From assembly GCA_033442325.1 (NCBI GenBank), contig JAWQFM010000011.1:1825584-1865926 (forward strand): DNA of 40,343 nucleotides, in the 5' to 3' direction. The translations under genes were made by a program, and so were the position numbers. Under the pieces are notes generated by a model. It saw only the letters and a list, made by a program, of their open reading frames with translations. It did not search any database and was not told the DNA's origin. Positions 1,700-40,343 of the stretch are shown here, in pieces (position 1 is the first letter of the stretch; every line of letters begins with the position of its first letter). The stretch comes from Salpingoeca rosetta. Taxonomy: Eukaryota > Protista > Choanoflagellata.

Positions 1700-4592
1700 T
1701 GACGGTGACGTCGCCAGAGACGGATCGGCTGAAGAGGAGCGCGTAAAGTCCTCGTTGAGGGAGGCGACAGTGGCGATGATGGGCCCTGGCGCAGGTCGAT
1801 GCGCAGAATGAATCTGCGACGCGTCCTGCGTCGTGGTTGATGGACTGCACCAGCGCGGCCTCAAACGCCCCGCGGTGCGACAGCCTGCCGGCAAGGACGT
1901 TGAACTTGGCGTCAAAGACGAGCGAGACAGAGTACGCGGGCACGCACGCACGGTGGGAGCACCTCAAACTGCTCCACTGATGGTGGTGCAGAGGCGGTCC
2001 GTCGTGGCCGTGGGCGTCGACACCTCGTACTCTGTGTGCTGGCACGAGCGCACGCGCTGGCACTCGCGGTCGTTGACCAGCGACGGCGCAACGAGCTCGT
2101 ACTCGCTGGACAGACACTGCATCCACGGCGAGCAGATGCGGTTCTGCGTGGGCATGAGCGGGCGCGAGATGAACGTGTTGTTGTTGGGGCATATGCGGGC
2201 CCATCTGGCACTCACGGTCCGTGCTGATGGTGGGTGCGGCCGTCTCAAACGAGCCAGGCTCGCAGGGCGACACACGCGCGTGGAGAAGTCCGTGTTGCTG
2301 TCGCGGTAGAACAGGGCCTCGATGCAGCGGCGGCACTGGCGGTCGGTGAAGATGGTGGGGCGCACCACCTCCTCGTAGCCGAGGTCGCACTCCGTCACAG
2401 GCGTGCAATCGCGCTGGCCAGAGAGGGCGGCAAAGTCCACGCCAGCCTGGCACGGCATGCACGGCGTGCTGGCGTTGTGGCGGTCCAGGTCGACGGTGCC
2501 GGCCGGGCACAGGAATTGCTTGCAGGAGCCGATGGAGCCCGCAGGCACATAGTGGCCGTAAAGGCACGGCTGGCAGGCGGTGAGCGGGTTGCGGTCGTGG
2601 TCGGTGGTGCCGATGGGGCATGGCTCGCACTTGGTGTTGGAGGTGGAGGTGGGGGCGCGGGTGCGCTGCTCGCCAGGGCCGCACTTGGTGATGAGGTGGC
2701 ACAGGCGGTGCGCTCGTACTCCGTCGGCAGATTGCACTGGGTCAGGTCGCGGCAGATGCGGTCCGTGGTCGGCGTGGCAGGGAACAGCTCAAACTGGTCC
2801 TGGTCGCACACGTCGAGCGTCGTGCACTCTGTGTCGTTGGTGGCGGTGCATGGCGCGCTGGTACTGCTCGTCAGAGCACGTGCCGCACTGCTGGCACGAC
2901 ACGTCATTCTCGCGAGTCGCAGGCGCGCAGGATGTATGTGTTTGGGGGAGCACGCGGAGCAGCCGGCGCACTGCACGTCCTCCAGCGCAGAGCAGGCGCG
3001 AATCTCGTAGCGGTCACTAGAGCACCCGGAGCACTCCAGCGTGCACTCGCGGTCGGAGTCGAGCGTGGGCACCTGGCTCTGGAAGGTGCCAAACTCGCAC
3101 TTGCTCACGGCCATGCGTGGAAATGTACTCTGAGGCAGCGCAACGCGTCACGGGCACGCACGTGTCCTGGACGCACTTGCGGCAGAGGCGGTCGTGCTGG
3201 CGTGTGGGTTTGCATAGCGAATCTCTTCCTCATCTCGCGAATCTCTTCCTCATCTGGACTGCACTGCGTGACGGGGCAGCACGACTCGGCCTGGCCGTTG
3301 ACGGGCTTGAAGGTGGCGCCAAGCTCGCACTGGCCGCACACGCGGTTGCTCGTGGGGGTGGGCTCGGCCGTCTCCTCCTCGCCGGCATCGCACGTGGTGA
3401 CGGGGAGGCAGGGCACGCCCTGGCTGGCCAGAGACAGCCTTGTACGTGCCCTCCAGGACACTCGTCGCAGACACGCAGTCGCTGATGAGGAGCGTCATGG
3501 CTTGCACCTCCTCAAACCCGGACGCGCAGTCTGTGACGTCGTTGCACGGGGTGGCAGGGTCGCTGTCGTGGTGGTCGTGGGTGCTGGCGTGGCAGGTGAA
3601 GCTGGAGCAGGAGCCGTGGGAGCCCGCCTCCGTGTAGTGGCCAGCGCACATCTGGCAACCCGTGGAGCCGTCGCTGTCCGCGTCGATGGGGCCGGCCGGG
3701 CAGTCGCGGTACACGCCGTCCGAGGAGCGGGTTGGCGCGGAGACCTCCTCCTGGCCGCACTCGCACTCCTCAATGGGCTCGCATTTGCTGCCGCCAATGG
3801 ACGGGGAGAACTCCGTCACGCCGTCGCACGGACAACAGTTGGCCGAATCGGCGTCGTAGACAAGGATGAAGCCTGTGCTGCACTCGCACGTGTCTGTGCA
3901 GCCTGGGCAGGAGCGGCGTGCCTCGTCGGCATCCATCTGGCGAATGGTGTTGCGGATGCCATCATCGCCCTGGCTGGAGCAGCACACGTCCAGTACAACG
4001 TCGAGCTGCTCGTCCGTGGGCCAGGCGCACACCATCTCCTCAAACAGCTGCGTGATGAGGTTGCAGGTGAGCGTGTCGCAGGAGCAGAGGCGGTCTGTGG
4101 TGAGCGTGGGCGGGATGGTCTCGCTGAAGGGCTCCTCGCACACGCTGGTGGGGAAGCACGAGGCGCGGTCTGACAGCGGCTGGTACTCCATGCCGAGGGT
4201 GCAGCTCACGCACGGTCGCGCACGGCGTTGCCAGAGACAGACGGACTCCTTCTGGCCAGGCTTGCACTCGGTCCAGGGAGAGCAGACGGCGTCGGAGGAC
4301 GCGGAGCATGAGGTGGAGGCCCAAGTGCCCATGCCGCACGTGGTGCATGGCACGCAGCGGTGGTCCTTGGCGTAGTAGCCAGTCGGGAGGGCAATGGGCA
4401 ATGCGCGACTGGTGAGATTGCCGTCGCAGAGGTTGAGGCAGTTGGTGGCGTCTGGTGGAATGGCATTCGGCACACGCGTGGAATGGCATTCAGCACACCC
4501 GCTGGCCGAGCTCATACTCGCCATCGGGGCACTTGCTGATGCAGCGGCCGTTACTGGAGGGTTGAATCCGCAGATCGTGCACTCATCGATGC
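1700..4592 (-). pseudogene. Degenerate gene for a TNFR-like Cys-rich repeat surface protein (repeats ending PT-x-T-x-DR-x-C), followed by a non-repeat segment
   Basis: The repeats are split among several minus-strand ORFs in different frames (3250..5043, 3105..3461, 2395..3114, 1964..2737), e.g. 'CDLGYEEVVRPTIFTDRQCRRC', 'CDAGEEETAEPTPTSNRVCGQC', 'CEEPFSETIPPTLTTDRLC'. Splice acceptor ccag|GCATCGATGAG at 4592. Many frameshifts. The 3' boundary is approximate. Confidence 0.75.
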
Positions 4593-4804
4593 CTGGAGGG
4601 GTGTGTGTGTGTGTGTGTGTGTGTGGAGGAGAGGATGGTGTGAGAGGCAATGACAACACTGTTGGGAGGTGTTGAGGAAACAAACACTGCTTCATCATCT
4701 TCAAGGTCACAACACTGACAAGAGACTTTGAGGACAAGCGCGCGCACACACACACACACACATGCACACACATACACACACACACACACACAAAGACAAC
4801 ATAC

Positions 4805-5330
4805 CGTTGGCCCGTGATGAAGCTATCCTTGAGGACCCGCCGCACGGTGTTGTTGTGCACTGTGTGGATTGTTGTGTGGTTGTGCTGCACAGCCTGCTCC
4901 AAGTAGCCGTTTGTGGTAAAGCATGTCTCCCCGAGCTCCATATCTGCGCCACCGCTCAGCGTCTTCGCGACAGCATCGACAGGGTCGTGGGAGTACTTGT
5001 TGGCGTTGACCATGTTTGCAAATTGCACAGCAGTCTGTTCCAATCATCACCATGTCACGCTTCCACTGCCCGCCCACGACGTCGTTGAGCAGCATGTTGT
5101 TCGCACACCAGGGCACGCCGTTGATGCTGGCGCACGAGCACATGGCAGTGATTGCCCGCGCGTGTACTGCACATGAGACACATGGCAGAGGGGAGCGGGA
5201 TGAAGATGAGGAGGTGGGAGGTGAGGAAGATGGCACAGGTCTGGTGGCGTGGTCGAACTAACAAGAAATGTTGATTGGAAGTACACACACACACACACAC
5301 ACAGACACACACACAGACACAGACACACGC

Positions 5331-7561: not shown

Positions 7562-7919
7562 TGTTAGAGAGTTGGGAGAACTCACTAAGATTTATGGTGT
7601 TCTGGGAGAAGCCCAGCAGGAACAAAGGAATTGTCTCATCACGAGACTTACGAGCCTACACGTCAAGTGACCAGAATGGTTTGGTTCACTCATGGTCATA
7701 CACGTCGGAGACCAAGTGAATGTGTGATTTACCCTGCCATGAGCGAACTGATACTGTGTTGCGTATTCATTCTTCCAACCAGTGTATTCCCTACCACAAC
7801 TCGTACGGCAATAGCTTTCTGCCCCAACCAATACAAACCATCGACTACAGCGATCACGATCATTGTCACACACACACCTACAACGTGAGGAGGGACACAC
7901 TGCATATTTCACGTTGACA
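7562..7919 (+). repeat. 5' LTR (358 bp)
   Basis: TGTTAGAGAG...ACGTTGACA. Three LTR-internal ORFs translate identically to those in the 3' copy (offset 4789). Confidence 0.97.
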
Positions 7920-7931
7920 GATTATGAGACC
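7920..7931 (+). promoter_or_regulatory. Primer-binding site GATTATGAGAC(C), half-tRNA (anticodon-arm) type, tRNA-Met
   Basis: Abuts the 5' LTR. Reverse complement (G)GTCTCATAATC is a CAT-anticodon stem-loop sequence of elongator tRNA-Met type. Confidence 0.75.
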
Positions 7932-8039
7932 CAACAACAACAGCAGCACAAAGACCTCAACAGCTCTGATCCTGAAGTGAGTGGGTTGGAAGAAACAAGG
8001 ACAGTCCCAAAAGAAAACACACACACGCACACCACCAAG

Positions 8040-11000
8040 ATGGCACACCGAGAGGAGGGTCGGCATATGATCCCAGTACTTGACGGAAACAAGGTCTCGT
8101 ACAGCTGGTGGAGCATGAGGATGAGACACTTCTTGAAGAGAAAGAAGGTCTGGGGTGTGGTGGATCCCGACTCGGAGGAGACGGATGAGGTGAAGAACTC
8201 AGATGCCTACCTGTGGATCACAGAGTATCTCACCGGGTTCCCAATGAAATTGGTGCACAAGCTCAAAGGGGATGAGGACGAGAACGCAAGAGCAGCGTGG
8301 AAGACACTGGCAAAGATGTACGAGAGAAAGGACAAGGTGGCAATGGTTGAGGCGAAGATCAAGATGTTCAACAGACAATGGGAGCGAGATGACACTGTGG
8401 AATCCTTTGTGAACGACTTCATGGAGACGCACGAGAACATGACGAGAGCAGGTGGAGACATGAGTGAGGAAGATCTCATCCAGCTCATCATCGTGCGCCT
8501 ACCAGAGAAGTACAGAGGGGTTAAGACGGTGTTGAGGCTGACCAAAGACCTGACGATCCAAGACATGATGCATGCCCTCAAGAGCGAAGAAGACATGACG
8601 AGCCTGAACGACCAGAGAGCAGGGCATGTGAAAGAGAGAGTAGCGAAGGTGTATGAGAAACCCAGAAGAGACAGCAAGCCAAAAGGAAGAAAAGAGGAAA
8701 GACGATGCTTCTTCTGCAACAAACCAGGCCATCTGAAGAGAGATTGTCGAGAATGGAAACGAGAAAGACAGAAGAAGTTCAAGGGACCACGACAGCACAG
8801 TGGCGAGAAGATGTTCAGTCTGCGAGAAGAAGAAGAGATGCTATGCAGCATTCGGGAAGAGGTTCGCAGCACACGCACGGACACGAAAGCAACTCAAGGT
8901 GCATGGTTACTGGATTCGGGAGCAAGCCGACACGTCACCAGCTTCAGAGAAGACCTGACGGACGTGAAAGAAACAGACACAGCAGTGACGGTGGCAGATG
9001 GCCGAACGGTGAAAGCTCTCGGACAAGGAACAGCACACATTCACACCAGCGCAGGTCGGGTGGTGTTGAGTGATGTGTTGTTGATGCCGGAAGGATTCGA
9101 GAGAATCATCAGCCAAAGAAGAGTGGTGCAAAGAGGACATCAAGTGCGCAGCAACAAAGACGGTGATATGGAGATCAAGTTCAGCAATGGAAAGAAACTC
9201 ACTCTCAGTACTATCGGAGGCATGAGCTACTTGATCGATGACGAGCACGAAGTGGTGAAAGTCCTCAGCAGCACGTCAAAGACCGCGTTGCAGGAGCTGC
9301 ACGAACTGTTCGCACACAGAGACAGCAAGAAGATACGAGAAAATGTGTGTGACACATGCTTGAAGAGCAAGATGAAGAGAAAGAGCATGCCACAGCACTC
9401 TGGCAGAGACAACCAGCAATACAAGAAGGGGCAGATGTTAGTGGCAGACATTGCAGGCCCCTACCCCACCTCACTCCATGGAGGCAGATATGCCCTTGTC
9501 ATGAAGGAGGTGAGGACGGGGTTCGTAATGGTGGGAGTGATGGAGAACAAAGGAGAAGCAGCAGAGGTGGCAACGCGTTTGATCCTAGCGGCACCGAGAC
9601 AGCTAGGAGTGGGAAAAGGATCAACGATTAAGACGGATAACGAAAGAGTCTTTACATCCACAGCATTTTCACACGCAATGTATGCCCTGAACATCACCAC
9701 GGCCACCTCAGCACCATACACTCCTGAAAGGAATGGCGACGCAGAGCGTACCATACAAACGCTCAACAACATGGCACGTGCCATGTTGCAGGCGGCATCA
9801 CTGGGTGAAGAGTTCTGGGCGGCAGCGCTGCGATACGCGGCGTACCTGAACAACTTCCTGGGGCCGTTCCGCAACATCTTCGGCAGAAACCCTCCAATGA
9901 CGCATTTACAGCAATTTGGTGTAACAGCTTATGTGAGGAACGAAGCCAGAAAGTCGAAGATGGCACCAAGGACAACAGAAGCAATCTATGTGGGGTATGA
10001 TGAACGCTCAAGAAGCCACCTTCTGTGGGAGCCAGGTAACAGACGCCTCACCCGATCCATCCACGTCAAGTTTTTGACAATGGATGAGTCGCGAGTGAGA
10101 GCTATCGTGCCTCTCTCCACACCAGCACCTACATTCACATCAGCACCTACACCCAAAAGAACCACATCAGCCTTACCTCATGTCAAGAAAGGAGCTAAGA
10201 CAGCACCTAAAGTAGCGACAGCACCCAACGCGGAAGTGGCGACACCGAAAACGAGAGCCACGAAGAAAAGGGGACATGGGAAGGCACCAAGGTCGATGAG
10301 AAAGGAGACAGCATTGGGTGAAACATCAGCAGCAGGCAAAACGACAGAATCCTCATCCGCAGCTGGAGAAGAGACAACAACATTTGACGCACCAATCACC
10401 GACACAACGGTGACACGTACAACAGCACCCTCAACCAGCAACGTGATACCTGAGGAACGCAACAGCGTTGAGGGGGAGGGTCGGATGACAGTAACCAGAA
10501 GTATCCCAGCATTCACCGCAGCTCCGCGCCGGTCCGCAAGGATCAAAGAGAGGCAGAAGGGCGAAGAAGTGAAAGCGGTGAAAGTGAAGAAAGGATGGGA
10601 AGAAGCGGTCGCAGAAGAGATGAGCAGTCTTGAACGCCATGATGTGTGGGATGAAGCAGTTGAGGGGGAGTATGACGTGAAGCCATTGAACACGAGGTTT
10701 GTGTACGCAACAAAAGGAGATGGGCGCAGAAAGGCACGGTTGGTGGTGATGGGGAACATGGAACCAGACGGAAACAACGGCAAGAGCAACTACTCACCCA
10801 CAGCATCCAGAACAACAACACTTACTTTCCTGGCCCTCAACAGAGCTCGGGTGGTCCGCCAGCTGGACATCAAGACAGCATTCCTACACGCACCCATACA
10901 GAGCAAGAAGCCGGTGTTGGTGAGAGGACCGGATGGTAAGGTGTACAGACTCAAGAGGGCGTTGTATGGTCTGAGGAGGAGCCCGCAAGACTTCAACAAG

Positions 11001-37922: not shown

Positions 37923-38812
37923 TGGTGGTGCTGCAATGATGAACCAGCGCAGTGAGAGGGAATGTGTGTGTGGGGGGGGGGGGGTGTGGGGGGTGTGCGA
38001 GGGAGAGAGACAGACAGAGACACAAAGAGACACAGAGACAGAGACAGAGAGCACGCACAACAACAACAACAACAACAACAGCAGCAGCAGCAGCAGCAGC
38101 AACAGCATCCATCCATCCACTTGCGCGCAGTTTGCATGTATATTTCGGTGCCTCGAATTTTATCATTAAACGCATTTAGCAAGCGCGAAGTTTTCGTCAG
38201 GTCGGTGCGAAACCTTGGAATGGGTTGGAATGCACACTCGCCATTCCATCCAACGCACCCTCGCGTCAAACCTCTCGTCGGACCTCACGCACCCCCGACC
38301 ATTCCTTGAGCCTGACGAGACAGCCGCCAGCCAGACAGTTTACCCACTCAGCCGCGTGAGCAGCAGCCCTCACCACCCACCACCCACCAGCCATCCTCTG
38401 TTGTTGCAGCAGCATCCGCCATTTGCCTTGCTTCGTGCTGCGTTCCTGGCGTGTCTTCATACGCATCCCGCACACCGCGCGTACAGAACTAGAGCATATC
38501 CCTCCTTGCTCACCCGTACCCGTGCAACCAAGACCGAGCCCAAGAGACCCTGCAAACAGACAGGCAGGTCTAACGACAACCACCTGACCACAGCAAGCAG
38601 GCAAGAGAAAGACAACGAAGGCACAGCAACAAGGCACCCATCCACCCATCCATCCAGCACGAGCACACACCCGCACGCACGCACGAACACACCACAAACG
38701 AACAGCCGACCGACCGACTAACTTGGAGTCCAACAAGCACGGTCACAACCAGCAGAAGAACAAAGGGCGCTCTTGCCGCTCTTCTCTTGTGTGAGCGCCT
38801 CGACCAGACATC

Positions 38813-40227
38813 ATGGTTGGCGGGGAGCGCAGGCGGAGCAGCAGCCAGGTGTTCTCTGCTGCTCTTGGGCTGTTAGAGAAGGGATCAACACAGGAGTTTC
38901 TGGTGGCGACGCGTATGCTTGTCACCGTCATCCACAACCTCTGCAAGAACCCAAACAGCGACAAGTATCGCAAACTCAAAACTACAAGCGAGGTGCGTCG
39001 ATGCTTGTTTGTATATGCGGATGGATGTAAGTGTACGCGAGTATGTTAGTATTTGTGTGTGTGTGTGTGTGTGTGTGTGTGAGTGTGTGTGTGTAAGAGG
39101 GTGTGTAGATAGAGATATGTGCGTGGTTGTTTGTGTGCATGGGCATCGTGGTATGCTCAAAGGGCTTACAGAGCCGTGGTGATGGTGATGATGAAACGGT
39201 GCGTGCCTCACTCTCTCACTCGTTTGCTCGTTTCTACATGCACATGTATCCAACACCAACACGCTCGCAGATTATTCAACAAATCTTGGCCATTCCCTTC
39301 ACGCATGACTGCCTCATCGCATGCAACTTTGTCAAGCATGTCAGTGAAAGCAGCCCTGCTTCTCTGCCACACCCGCCTGCATGCATGCACGTTCCTCAAC
39401 CTCAGCTGCAGCCGTGACGCAGATTTTGCTGTCCCCCCGATATCATACGTTTGCCACTCGCGTGAACGCACAAGCACGCTCAACACAGAGTGTCTGTACT
39501 CATCCACCGTCACTCACATTCATCCACCGCACTATTCCTTTTCCTTCCAACAGGACAAGTATTACAAGCTGCAAGGAGACATCGACGTGAAAGACCTTCA
39601 CGCCTGTATGGACCTTCTCATCGAAGGTGTGTGGGTATGTGGGTGGGTGTGGGTGTCTGTCTCTCTGTCTGTCCCTCTGTCTCTGTCTGTCCCTCTGTCT
39701 CTGTCTGTCTCTGTCTCTCTGTCTCTCTGTCCCTCTGTGTGCGGGTATGACATCATTTATGTCTTTGATTTATAATCTTGTGTGCGATGCGCTTCATGCT
39801 CTGAAATGTGGTTAATCGGACTAACCATTTCTTTCCTTCCCTCACCCCCCCCCCCCCACACATACACGTTGTTGCAGCCCGAAAGAGGAAAGGCGTGATG
39901 GAGGCGTGGGAGGTGTTCCCGTCCGATCTTGAGCTTGGCGATAAGATTGGCAGCGGCAAGTTTGGAGCCGTGTTTGAAGGTCTATGGAACGGCCACAAGG
40001 TGGCCATCAAGACCATGAAACGCGCCACCCAGGACGGCATGCGCGATTTCGAACGCGAGGCAGAAGTGATGCGCACACTCAAGCATCCAAACGTCCTAAA
40101 CTTGCTTGGCGTTGTGCTGACGCAGCAGCCAGCGCTCATTGTGCTTGAGCTGATGGGGGCCAGCTTCCTCTCCCTGCTCACAAAATGCGAGCTCACAGAC
40201 AAGGACATCCTCGACTGCGCCATGCAG
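38813..40227 (+). CDS. PUB-domain protein kinase (tyrosine kinase / TKL type), 5' part; continues beyond the window
   Basis: Exons 38813-38992, 39271-39339, 39554-39626, 39878-40227 splice in frame. N-terminal PUB-like segment ATRMLVTVIHNLCKNPNSDKYRKLKTTSE-IIQQILAIPFTHDCLIACNF, then kinase N-lobe WEVFPSDLELGDKIGSGKFGAVFEGLWNGHKVAIKT..DFEREAEVMRTLKHPNVLNLLGV..QQPALIVLELM. Confidence 0.85.
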
Positions 40228-40343
40228 GTGTGTAGCGTGTGTGAATGTGCGTTAACGTGTATGTCTGTGTCGGTGTGGTTGTGTGTTTGTGTGCTTTTGT
40301 GTCTGTGTTCGTGTGTCTGTGTTTGTGCTTGTGTATATGTCTG

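What the first reader, a model, noticed from the sequence alone, without database searches (positions are those of the whole stretch)
38813..40227. PUB domain fused to a tyrosine-kinase-like domain: candidate dedicated p97/VCP kinase
Seen: four exons splice in frame, joining an N-terminal PUB-like domain (HNLCKNPNSDKYRKL...CLIACNF; the usual GF is NF here) to a TK-type kinase N-lobe. The ORF track misses the kinase exon. Established: PUB domains (PNGase, HOIP, UBXN6) bind the Tyr-containing C-terminal motif of p97/VCP, and phosphorylating that tyrosine abolishes binding. I do not know of a PUB + tyrosine kinase architecture in animals. Inference: the kinase could dock on the unphosphorylated p97 tail, phosphorylate it and release itself, linking pTyr signalling to p97 cofactor exchange. 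The catalytic loop lies outside the window, so TK versus TKL is not settled.
Basis: partly seen in the sequence, partly recalled or inferred. Interest (0 to 1): 0.78.

Follow-up and report, generated by a model that had tools for sequence, protein, structure and literature searches.

The report
PUB-tyrosine kinase-RA gene, split by assembly
This is the front end of a real, expressed Salpingoeca rosetta gene that joins a PUB domain to a true tyrosine kinase and a Ras-association domain; the fusion is unusual, but it belongs to a small choanoflagellate family, and nothing shows that it targets p97.

Summary
The spliced product passes the Pfam PUB threshold and folds like the PNGase PUB domain.

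The gene runs on past the contig end. Exon 5 lies 630 kb away on the same contig, behind a (GT)n run, so the assembly is broken inside intron 4. The full model has 14 exons and 1533 codons: PUB, tyrosine kinase, RA domain, then a disordered tail of about 1000 residues. The reference annotation splits it into two half-kinase proteins.

TK versus TKL is settled as TK (HCDIACRN, DFGLAR, FPIRWTAPE; nearest solved relatives are Abl and Src).

The architecture is not unique. An ortholog in another choanoflagellate is also PUB-TK-RA. A paralog family is PUB-TK-SH2-TIR, the published "Kinase TIRs". This scan already found that paralog on other DNA of this genome. InterPro tables from 2013 list PUB plus kinase for both S. 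rosetta genes, but I found no paper that discusses it.

The p97-kinase idea remains untested. The host p97 does end in DEDLYS. However, two of the five canonical tail-binding residues are replaced (Tyr to Val, as in SPATA2, which binds no such motif, and Asn to Ser).

The parts
38600..38812 (+). 5' untranslated region (the transcript contig starts about 170 nt further upstream, near 38430)
   Evidence: X4 record 1 and X7 record 4 cover it. ATG 38813 is the first start codon after an in-frame stop.
38813..38992 (+). Exon 1, 60 codons: N-terminus and first half of the PUB domain (helix A, NP loop, KYRKLKTTS)
   Evidence: Pfam PUB E 2.6e-6 on this exon alone; donor GT; junction seen in X4 and X7.
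38993..39270 (+). Intron 1 (GT..AG, holds a (TG)n run)
   Evidence: Skipped in RNA contigs of two runs; tandem repeat 39054-39106.
39271..39339 (+). Exon 2, 23 codons: middle of the PUB domain (..CLIACNF..)
   Evidence: aligns with PNGase ..ECLFEMGF...
39340..39553 (+). Intron 2 (GT..AG)
   Evidence: Joint 39339->39554 in X4 and X7.
39554..39626 (+). Exon 3, 24 codons plus 1 base: last strands and last helix of the PUB domain
   Evidence: model helix 95-111.
39627..39877 (+). Intron 3 (GT..AG, TGTC-type repeat)
   Evidence: X4 record 1 pieces 633-703 and 704-1057 abut across it; repeat.
39878..40227 (+). Exon 4: short basic linker, LEAWEVF motif and kinase N-lobe (GSGKFG, VAIK, helix-C Glu, hinge)
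   Evidence: Pfam PK_Tyr_Ser-Thr E 5.9e-20. RNA contigs continue from 40227 into exon 5, which lies elsewhere.
40228..40343 (+). Start of intron 4: GT donor, then GT-rich repeat running into the contig end. The rest of the gene (exons 5-14) is at G000:C11:1236135-1241936.
   Evidence: Contig ends at the window end; repeats; exon 5 found at C11:1236137 behind a (GT)n run.

Best explanation
The finding is the first four exons of one 14-exon, 1533-codon gene of Salpingoeca rosetta. The gene encodes a soluble (non-receptor) tyrosine kinase. Its parts in order are: an N-terminal PUB domain (about residues 10-111); a short basic linker; a Src/Abl-like kinase domain with every catalytic residue, but HCD in place of HRD and no activation-loop tyrosine; a Ras-association (ubiquitin-fold) domain; and a disordered Ser/Asp/Arg/Pro-rich tail of about 1000 residues.

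Shown: the splicing of exons 1-5, the domain identities, the TK type, and membership of a small choanoflagellate-restricted PUB-TK family. That family's other branch is the PUB-TK-SH2-TIR 'Kinase TIR' proteins.

Inferred: the PUB domain works as a docking module. Its peptide pocket is conserved within the family but rebuilt (Val39, His41, Asn42, Pro47, Tyr52, Arg53, Thr57, Ser/Asn59, beside a basic KYRK patch). It would hold an acidic, unphosphorylated tyrosine-type motif or another partner and so bring the kinase to its substrate. Phosphorylation of the docked motif or of neighbouring copies would then release the kinase. The RA domain would add a small-GTPase input. The tail would offer proline and tyrosine docking sites.

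The ligand is unknown. The p97 tail is one candidate, but the rebuilt pocket argues that it is not the canonical or only one.
For: One mRNA. Exon model: GT..AG at all 13 introns, no internal stop, 1533 codons. Exons 5-14 are identical to database protein P0267 after its first 3 residues. Orthologs P0154 and P0005 are colinear across the break.

PUB: Pfam 37.1 bits against a threshold of 34.3. PNGase PUB structures match at E 1e-6 over residues 9-107. The AlphaFold model has pLDDT 81 and matches PNGase PUB at TM 0.83, rmsd 1.8 A, followed by UBXD1, SPATA2 and HOIP PUB.

TK type: HCDIACRN, DFGLAR, FPIRWTAPE, SFGVLFWE, CW..DPEERP. The nearest named proteins are FRK, SRK2, Fer and Fes at 37-39% identity. 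The ortholog's best solved relatives are the Src-Abl ancestor, ABL1, Fyn and EphA2.

RA: 32.4 bits against a threshold of 21 in P0267 and 28.7 in ortholog P0154. No transmembrane segment.

Family: nine proteins share the N-terminal domain. The invariant or near-invariant positions cluster at the pocket region.
Against: No binding or kinase activity has been measured. The pocket reading rests on alignment to PNGase and UBXD1, not on a structure of this protein. Exons 6-14 are supported by the annotated protein, by orthologs and by splice signals; I did not see reads laid on them. The family profile found no member outside choanoflagellate-type sources, but the searches were limited by word sharing and length windows, so absence elsewhere is not proven.
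Confidence: 0.5

Rival explanations
1. One reading: a dedicated p97/Cdc48 kinase. The PUB domain docks on the unphosphorylated C-terminal tail of the p97 hexamer. The kinase phosphorylates the penultimate tyrosine of that tail or of neighbouring tails. This releases the kinase itself and blocks other PUB and PUL cofactors.
For: The S. rosetta p97 gene ends in ...AEDDEDLYS, a canonical acidic Leu-Tyr tail. Asn42, Tyr52 and Lys56 of the pocket are kept, along with a basic KYRKLK patch. Position 59 is Ser or Asn in all nine relatives, both of which can form hydrogen bonds. Tyrosine phosphorylation of the tail abolishes PUB binding in PNGase, HOIP and UBXD1 (PMC6995525, PMC4017264).
Against: The first pocket Tyr (PNGase Y38) is Val in eight of nine family members. 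The same change occurs in SPATA2, which binds no such motif (PMC6995525). The cornerstone Asn (PNGase N58, HOIP N102) is Ser here, while the three ordinary PUB genes of the same genome keep Asn. Lys56 is not conserved in the paralogs.
Confidence: 0.22
2. The PUB domain is an internal regulator, not a substrate recruiter. It packs on the adjacent kinase lobe, or binds the protein's own ubiquitin-fold RA domain or a tail motif, and keeps the kinase off until a signal such as Ras/Rap-GTP on the RA domain opens it. This would be comparable to SH3-SH2 clamps in Src and Abl.
For: The linker between PUB and kinase is only about 15 residues. It carries the conserved LEAWE(L/V)F motif with invariant Trp118 and Phe121. 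PNGase PUB has a second face that binds ubiquitin or the HR23 ubiquitin-like domain (cited in PMC4017264), and RA domains have a ubiquitin fold. The non-RD catalytic loop and the lack of an activation-loop Tyr suggest control by something other than loop phosphorylation.
Against: The paralog branch has SH2-TIR in place of RA but keeps the same PUB features, so an RA-specific clamp cannot explain family-wide conservation. No conserved C-terminal tyrosine motif is shared by family members.
Confidence: 0.15
3. The PUB-like domain is a structural relic that no longer binds anything, kept only as a folded N-terminal cap.
For: Two canonical pocket residues are lost. Most relatives score below the Pfam threshold (24-33 bits).
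Against: Positions around the former pocket (His41, Pro47, Thr57 invariant; Val39, Asn42, Tyr52, Arg53, Ser/Asn59 nearly so) are the best conserved of the domain. This holds across proteins only 24-40% identical overall.
Confidence: 0.08
4. The PUB exons and the kinase C-lobe exons belong to two separate genes, and the joined RNA contigs are assembly chimeras or rare trans-spliced products.
For: In the assembly the two halves lie 630 kb apart, in the wrong order for cis-splicing. The reference annotation lists them as two proteins.
Against: The join is exon to exon at a GT donor and an AG acceptor, with no repeat in the RNA. It is seen in runs from 2011 and 2024. Each half alone is half a kinase domain (Pfam positions 1-104 and 109-258 of 258). 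Orthologs from other species carry both halves in one protein. The contig ends in a GT-rich repeat, and exon 5 follows a (GT)n run.
Confidence: 0.02

Closest known systems
S. rosetta PTSG_01646 / P0152 and its orthologs (PUB-TK-SH2-TIR; the 'Kinase TIR' class of Richter et al., bioRxiv 10.1101/211789)
   Same: It has the same N-terminal PUB-like domain with Val, His-Asn and TTS features, the same LEAWELF linker, and the same HCD-type tyrosine kinase domain (41% identity in the N-lobe). It is choanoflagellate-restricted and soluble.
   Different: After the kinase it carries SH2 and TIR domains. This gene instead carries an RA domain and a 1000-residue disordered tail, with no SH2 or TIR. The published description of the class does not mention PUB.
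P0154, a 1285-aa protein from a choanoflagellate transcriptome (EukProt)
   Same: It has the same PUB-TK-RA order. It is colinear with every exon up to the RA domain, with 44% identity in PUB, 57-77% in the kinase exons and 52% in RA. It is the likely ortholog.
   Different: Its tail is not alignable. It keeps Asn at the cornerstone position where this protein has Ser.
PUB domains of PNGase/NGLY1 and UBXD1/UBXN6 (p97 cofactors)
   Same: The fold matches (TM 0.83, rmsd 1.8 A to 2hpj and 2hpl), the proteins align over their full length, and Asn, the second Tyr and the basic residue of the pocket are kept.
   Different: Those proteins carry the complete YxxN(x)9Y and K/RxxN motifs and are fused to a glycanase or to UBX, not to a kinase. 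Here the first Tyr is Val and the last Asn is Ser (PMC6995525).
SPATA2 PUB domain
   Same: It is a PUB fold in which the first pocket Tyr is replaced by Val. It shows that a PUB domain can change partner: it binds the CYLD USP domain and no PIM (PMC6995525; fold match).
   Different: SPATA2 has N- and C-terminal extensions and no enzyme domain. The sequence similarity here is closer to PNGase.
Animal cytoplasmic tyrosine kinases (Abl, Src family, FRK, Fer/Fes)
   Same: The kinase-domain motifs match, and the WE motif lies ahead of strand 1. Identity is 37-39%, and these are the best solved relatives.
   Different: Those use SH3-SH2 or F-BAR-SH2 modules and an HRD loop with activation-loop Tyr. 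This one uses PUB and RA, has HCD, and has no loop Tyr.

Membership tests
PUB domain (Pfam PF09409) | Profile match at or above the curated gathering score | tested here: met
   P0001 scores 37.1 bits against 34.3, over residues 27-85. Exon 1 alone scores 27.7 bits.
PUB domain (Pfam PF09409) | PUB fold (helical bundle plus small three-stranded sheet) | tested here: met
   AlphaFold model with pLDDT 81.4. Foldseek probability 1.00, TM 0.83 and rmsd 1.8 A to the PNGase PUB domain. UBXD1, SPATA2 and HOIP PUB come next.
PIM-binding (p97-tail-binding) PUB domains | YxxN(x)9Y core of the tyrosine pocket | tested here: not met
   Aligned residues are Val39, Asn42 and Tyr52. The first Tyr is missing here and in 9 of 9 relatives. 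The motif is defined in PMC6995525.
PIM-binding (p97-tail-binding) PUB domains | K/RxxN motif that holds the peptide backbone or C-terminal carboxylate (the 'cornerstone' Asn) | tested here: not met
   Lys56 is kept but the Asn is Ser59. Two relatives keep Asn. The other PUB genes of this genome keep Asn.
PIM-binding (p97-tail-binding) PUB domains | Measured binding to the p97 C-terminal peptide, lost on Tyr phosphorylation | not testable with these tools
   This needs a binding assay. The host tail ...DEDLYS exists.
Tyrosine kinase group (TK) of eukaryotic protein kinases | Catalytic loop of the D-[LI]-A-x-R-N type (TKL and Ser/Thr kinases have D-x-K-x-x-N) | tested here: met
   The loop reads LHCDIACRNVLV in exon 6. 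The Arg of HRD is Cys across the family.
Tyrosine kinase group (TK) of eukaryotic protein kinases | P+1 loop P-[IV]-[KR]-W-[TM]-A-P-E and other TK subdomain motifs | tested here: met
   FPIRWTAPE, DFGLAR, SDVWSFGVLFWE and CW..DPEERP are present.
Tyrosine kinase group (TK) of eukaryotic protein kinases | Closest relatives are established tyrosine kinases | tested here: met
   FRK, SRK2, Fer and Fes at 37-39% identity. The Src-Abl ancestor, ABL1, Fyn and EphA2 top the solved structures for the ortholog.
Tyrosine kinase group (TK) of eukaryotic protein kinases | Tyrosine phosphotransfer activity | not testable with these tools
   All catalytic residues are present (VAIK Lys, helix-C Glu, loop Asp and Asn, DFG). 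Activity is inferred only.
'Kinase TIR' class (Richter et al.) | A TIR domain in the same soluble protein as the kinase | tested here: not met
   No TIR or SH2 is found in exons 5-14 or in P0267. This gene is a sister branch, not a member.
Ras-association (RA) domain, PF00788 | Profile match above the gathering score | tested here: met
   P0267 scores 32.4 bits against 21, over residues 214-283. Ortholog P0154 scores 28.7 bits.

The most novel reading that the evidence does not exclude
PUB-TK proteins may be 'read-then-write' enzymes for PUB-interacting tyrosine motifs. The PUB domain would recognise the unphosphorylated motif (the Cdc48/p97 tail or another PIM). The fused kinase would phosphorylate it, on the same or a neighbouring subunit. 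The product could then no longer bind any PUB domain. In the paralog branch a fused SH2 would read the product. That would make tyrosine phosphorylation a built-in switch of p97 cofactor exchange, or of another PUB-dependent complex, in the sister group of animals.
Probability: 0.2. Interest if true: 0.8.

Novelty: new variant of a known kind. Interest (0 to 1): 0.45.

Why it matters
PUB domains are known only as adaptors in the ubiquitin and p97 system. Their binding is switched off when a tyrosine in the partner is phosphorylated. No dedicated kinase for that switch is known.

A natural fusion of a PUB domain to a tyrosine kinase, conserved across several choanoflagellates, is a direct lead to such a link. 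It can be tested in S. rosetta, where genome editing is in use (PMC11984502).

There are also practical results. Two annotated 'half-kinase' genes of the reference genome turn out to be one gene, one of them misnamed a serine/threonine kinase. An assembly error at a (GT)n run is located. The published Kinase TIR class gains a sister branch and a shared, previously undiscussed N-terminal domain.

Tried and rejected
1. Complex prediction of the PUB domain (P0001 residues 1-112) with the 33-residue S. rosetta p97 tail. The verdict was 'no answer': the score was 0.41 but one control scored 0.24. It counts neither for nor against binding.

2. Word search with only the PUB part of the paralog-type protein P0036. 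It found only the query itself, so it gave no information on distribution.

3. A local profile of the family's PUB region run against all 266 proteins fetched. Only the nine training proteins matched, so no new members were found.

4. ESM Atlas look-alikes of the PUB part. It returned only ordinary PUB clusters (with UBA, UBX, PNGase, PPPDE, WLM or VHL partners) and none with a kinase. The Atlas holds only clusters of 50 or more members, so this does not show absence.

5. Raw RNA runs X17 and X18 gave 0 and 1 reads. They are not a test of expression.

6. Fetching DNA downstream of the window failed because the contig ends there.

7. The metagenome contig of the 91% relative P0003 is only 799 bp, too short to show the true layout of intron 4.

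8. Manning et al. 2008 (M. brevicollis kinome) is not held in the library. I therefore could not check whether that paper names this family.

9. A search for an acidic Leu/Met-Tyr motif in the protein's own tail found none with the pattern I used.

10. The joined step was left out. I did not build, search or fold the joined 1533-residue protein. Exons were searched one by one by reference. The only spliced sequences used were the database's own proteins P0001 and P0267.

Full report
**Where and what.** The window is G000:C11:1825584-1865926 of a 55.4-Mb genome, and contig C11 ends at the last base of the window. The genome is Salpingoeca rosetta. The annotated S. rosetta protein P0152 maps to contig C5 with exon cores 100% identical, and the size fits the published 55-Mb genome (PMC4054682).

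**The observation.** They are 38813-38992, 39271-39339, 39554-39626 and 39878-40227, with GT..AG at each intron and one open frame. I laid four public runs on 38600-40343. A 4678-nt contig of a 2024 run (X4, depth 378) covers all four exons and skips exactly the three introns. A 2011 run (X7) shows junctions 1 and 2 independently. Both contigs run on past 40227 into 30 letters that are not in the window. These letters read ...VAAGLEYVHH, the kinase E-helix.

**The rest of the gene.** That 30-mer occurs once in the genome, at C11:1236137 on the same strand. This is 630 kb before the window, directly behind a (GT)n run. The window itself ends in a GT-rich repeat. Such an order cannot be cis-spliced as assembled, so the assembly is most likely broken or misjoined inside intron 4.

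From that point I read ten more exons:
- L004 5636-5669, 5935-6059, 6309-6382, 6519-6588, 6788-6922, 7186-7259, 7384-7537, 7680-7758 and 7954-8115
- L006 115-3134, followed by the stop codon

All introns are GT..AG, no exon has an internal stop, and the total is 1533 codons. The model is confirmed by a database protein. P0267 (1312 aa, named 'serine/threonine protein kinase [Salpingoeca rosetta]') equals exons 5-14 exactly, after three residues (MHQ) taken from the end of intron 4. The first half exists in the database as P0001 (224 aa), which is exons 1-4.

So the reference annotation holds two half-kinases. P0001 covers Pfam kinase positions 1-104 and P0267 covers 109-258 of 258. Orthologs from other species carry both halves in one chain and are colinear with every exon.

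The joined 1533-residue protein was not built, searched or folded.

**Domains.**
- *PUB.* P0001 scores 37.1 bits against the Pfam threshold of 34.3. phmmer finds the solved PNGase PUB domains at E 1e-6 over residues 9-107. An AlphaFold model built on nine family sequences has pLDDT 81.4. Its best structural matches are PNGase PUB (TM 0.83, rmsd 1.8 A), then UBXD1, SPATA2 and HOIP PUB.
- *Kinase.* The motifs are GSGKFG, VAIK, helix-C Glu, LHCDIACRNVLV, DFGLAR, FPIRWTAPE, SFGVLFWE and CW..DPEERP. The A-x-R-N loop and the PIRWTAPE loop are tyrosine-kinase marks. The nearest named proteins are FRK, SRK2, Fer and Fes at 37-39% identity. The ortholog's best solved relatives are the Src-Abl ancestor, ABL1, Fyn and EphA2. 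TK versus TKL is therefore settled as TK.
- *Unusual kinase features.* It has HCD in place of HRD, across the whole family, and no tyrosine in the activation loop.
- *RA.* P0267 scores 32.4 bits against a threshold of 21.
- *Last exon.* Its 1006 residues have no Pfam match. They are rich in Ser, Asp, Arg and Pro, with proline runs and nine tyrosines, several in acidic context.
- *Topology.* There is no membrane segment.

**Relatives.** A full scan of 1.84 billion representatives with exon 4, plus a word search with a relative, gave a small set of proteins with the same N-terminal domain.
- P0154 (1285 aa) is PUB-TK-RA, the likely ortholog.
- P0152 (S. rosetta PTSG_01646), P0036, P0153, P0134, P0100 and P0033 are (PUB-)TK-SH2-TIR.
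- P0056 and P0099 are shorter or partial.
- Where a source is on record (six of them), it is choanoflagellate-type transcriptomes (five, EukProt) or S. rosetta (one). One comes from the 'merc' collection without a name, and two have no recorded source.

The next best hits are ordinary animal Src, FRK and Fer kinases without PUB. The SH2-TIR branch matches the 'Kinase TIR' class named by Richter et al. (bioRxiv 10.1101/211789), whose text does not mention PUB. This scan had already reported that paralog on another piece of this genome (finding s1-432434). My Pfam scan of P0152 agrees with it.

**Earlier annotation and literature.** The supplementary InterPro tables of the 2013 genome paper list 'PUB domain' together with kinase entries for two genes.
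- PTSG_01646 is 2664 nt, which equals P0152.
- PTSG_11483 has kinase and ATP-site entries but no active-site entry. This fits the truncated P0001. The identification is by inference, because only two loci in the genome have PUB beside a kinase.

In those tables PTSG_11483 sits in the 'Attach and Swim' gene sets. Its counts are 13, 84, 167 and 102 in thecate and swimming samples, against 1, 4, 5 and 1 in rosette and chain colonies.

Six full-text searches and the holozoan tyrosine-kinome paper (PMC8662651) gave no discussion of a PUB-kinase fusion.

**The p97 hypothesis.** PNGase, HOIP and UBXD1 PUB domains bind the p97 tail, and Tyr805 phosphorylation abolishes binding (PMC4017264, PMC6995525). 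The S. rosetta p97 gene (C5:1985354-1988760) ends in ...AEDDEDLYS.

The pocket, however, is not canonical. Published work defines it as YxxN(x)9Y plus K/RxxN. The residues are PNGase Y38, N41, Y51, R55, N58 and UBXD1 Y181, N184, Y194, K198, N201. Mutation of the core residues strongly impairs binding, and HOIP N102 is the 'cornerstone'. Here the aligned residues are Val39, Asn42, Tyr52, Lys56 and Ser59.

Across the nine relatives:
- The first Tyr is never present (Val in eight, Ala in one).
- Position 59 is Ser in seven and Asn in two.
- Lys56 varies.

SPATA2, whose PUB domain has the same Tyr-to-Val change, binds no such motif and instead binds CYLD. The three ordinary PUB genes of this genome keep the Asn.

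On the other side, the best conserved positions of the family domain all lie around the former pocket. These are His41, Pro47 and Thr57 (invariant) and Val39, Asn42, Tyr52, Arg53 and Ser/Asn59 (nearly so). A basic patch is also kept beside them. This speaks for a working pocket that still takes a polar or acidic peptide. A complex prediction gave no verdict and is not used as evidence.

**Reading.** The gene, its splicing, its domains and its TK type are shown. That the PUB domain docks the kinase to a partner through a rebuilt pocket is inference. That the partner is p97 is possible, at about one in five, but unsupported. An internal regulatory role is a serious rival, because the linker is very short and conserved and the loop is non-RD.

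**Verdict.** This is a new architectural variant (PUB-TK-RA) within a choanoflagellate PUB-TK family. One branch of that family is published, and the PUB part has only been machine-annotated. Interest is moderate: the fusion is a good, testable lead for a link between tyrosine phosphorylation and PUB-dependent complexes, but no function is shown.

Noticed in passing
window 40228-40343 and G000:C11:1236000-1236140 (L004 5510-5635): Assembly break or misjoin inside intron 4. The contig ends in a GT-rich repeat. The next exon lies 630 kb upstream on the same contig and strand, right after a (GT)n run. That run also abuts the 5' end of an unrelated minus-strand gene (ATG near L004 5509).
   Followed up: partly
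P0001 (window exons 1-4) and P0267 (G000:C11:1236126-1241936): The reference annotation holds this gene as two proteins. One is a 224-aa fragment. The other is a 1312-aa 'serine/threonine protein kinase' that starts with three residues read from intron sequence. Each has only half a kinase domain, and the name of the second is wrong as to kinase type.
   Followed up: yes
window 7863-12020 (+): An open frame of 1385 codons with copia-type gag, zinc knuckle, integrase and RVT_2 reverse transcriptase domains. It is a Ty1/copia-like LTR retrotransposon. I observed it only.
   Followed up: no
window 3253-5043 (-): A 597-codon open frame with a weak TNFR/NGFR cysteine-rich repeat match (27.6 bits, just under the threshold).
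   Followed up: no
L024 (ENA metagenome assembly ERZ17086692, 799-bp contig): An environmental contig encodes a protein 91% identical to exons 3-4 and has the same exon 4 / intron 4 border. A close relative of S. rosetta carrying this gene is therefore present in a metagenome.
   Followed up: partly
Fairclough et al. 2013 supplementary tables (PMC4054682), gene PTSG_11483: The gene model that most likely equals exons 1-4 is listed among genes up in thecate and swimming solitary cells. Its read counts are 13-167, against 1-5 in rosette and chain colonies.
   Followed up: partly
G000:C5:1985354-1988760 (L021): The S. rosetta p97/Cdc48 gene. Its last exon encodes ...AEDDEDLYS, a tail with a penultimate tyrosine as in yeast and animals.
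   Followed up: yes
G000:C17:317316, C14:947037-947330, C7:1471051-1471439: Three further PUB-domain loci with no adjacent kinase-domain match. All keep the KYRR..(K/L)(E/A)N motif with the cornerstone Asn. I did not work out which genes they belong to.
   Followed up: partly
Family alignment A1, columns for P0001 residues 112-125: The linker motif (R/K)K..(V/L)LEAWE(L/V)F, with invariant Trp118 and Phe121, sits between PUB and kinase in all nine relatives. It recalls the WE motif ahead of strand 1 in Src and Abl and may couple the two domains.
   Followed up: no
P0036, P0134, P0100, P0033 (paralog branch), about 50-90 residues after the kinase domain: A conserved aromatic motif, (L/M)(G/T)PF(S/T)(F/Y)F, lies between the kinase and the SH2 domain in the SH2-TIR branch. 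Its role is unknown.
   Followed up: no
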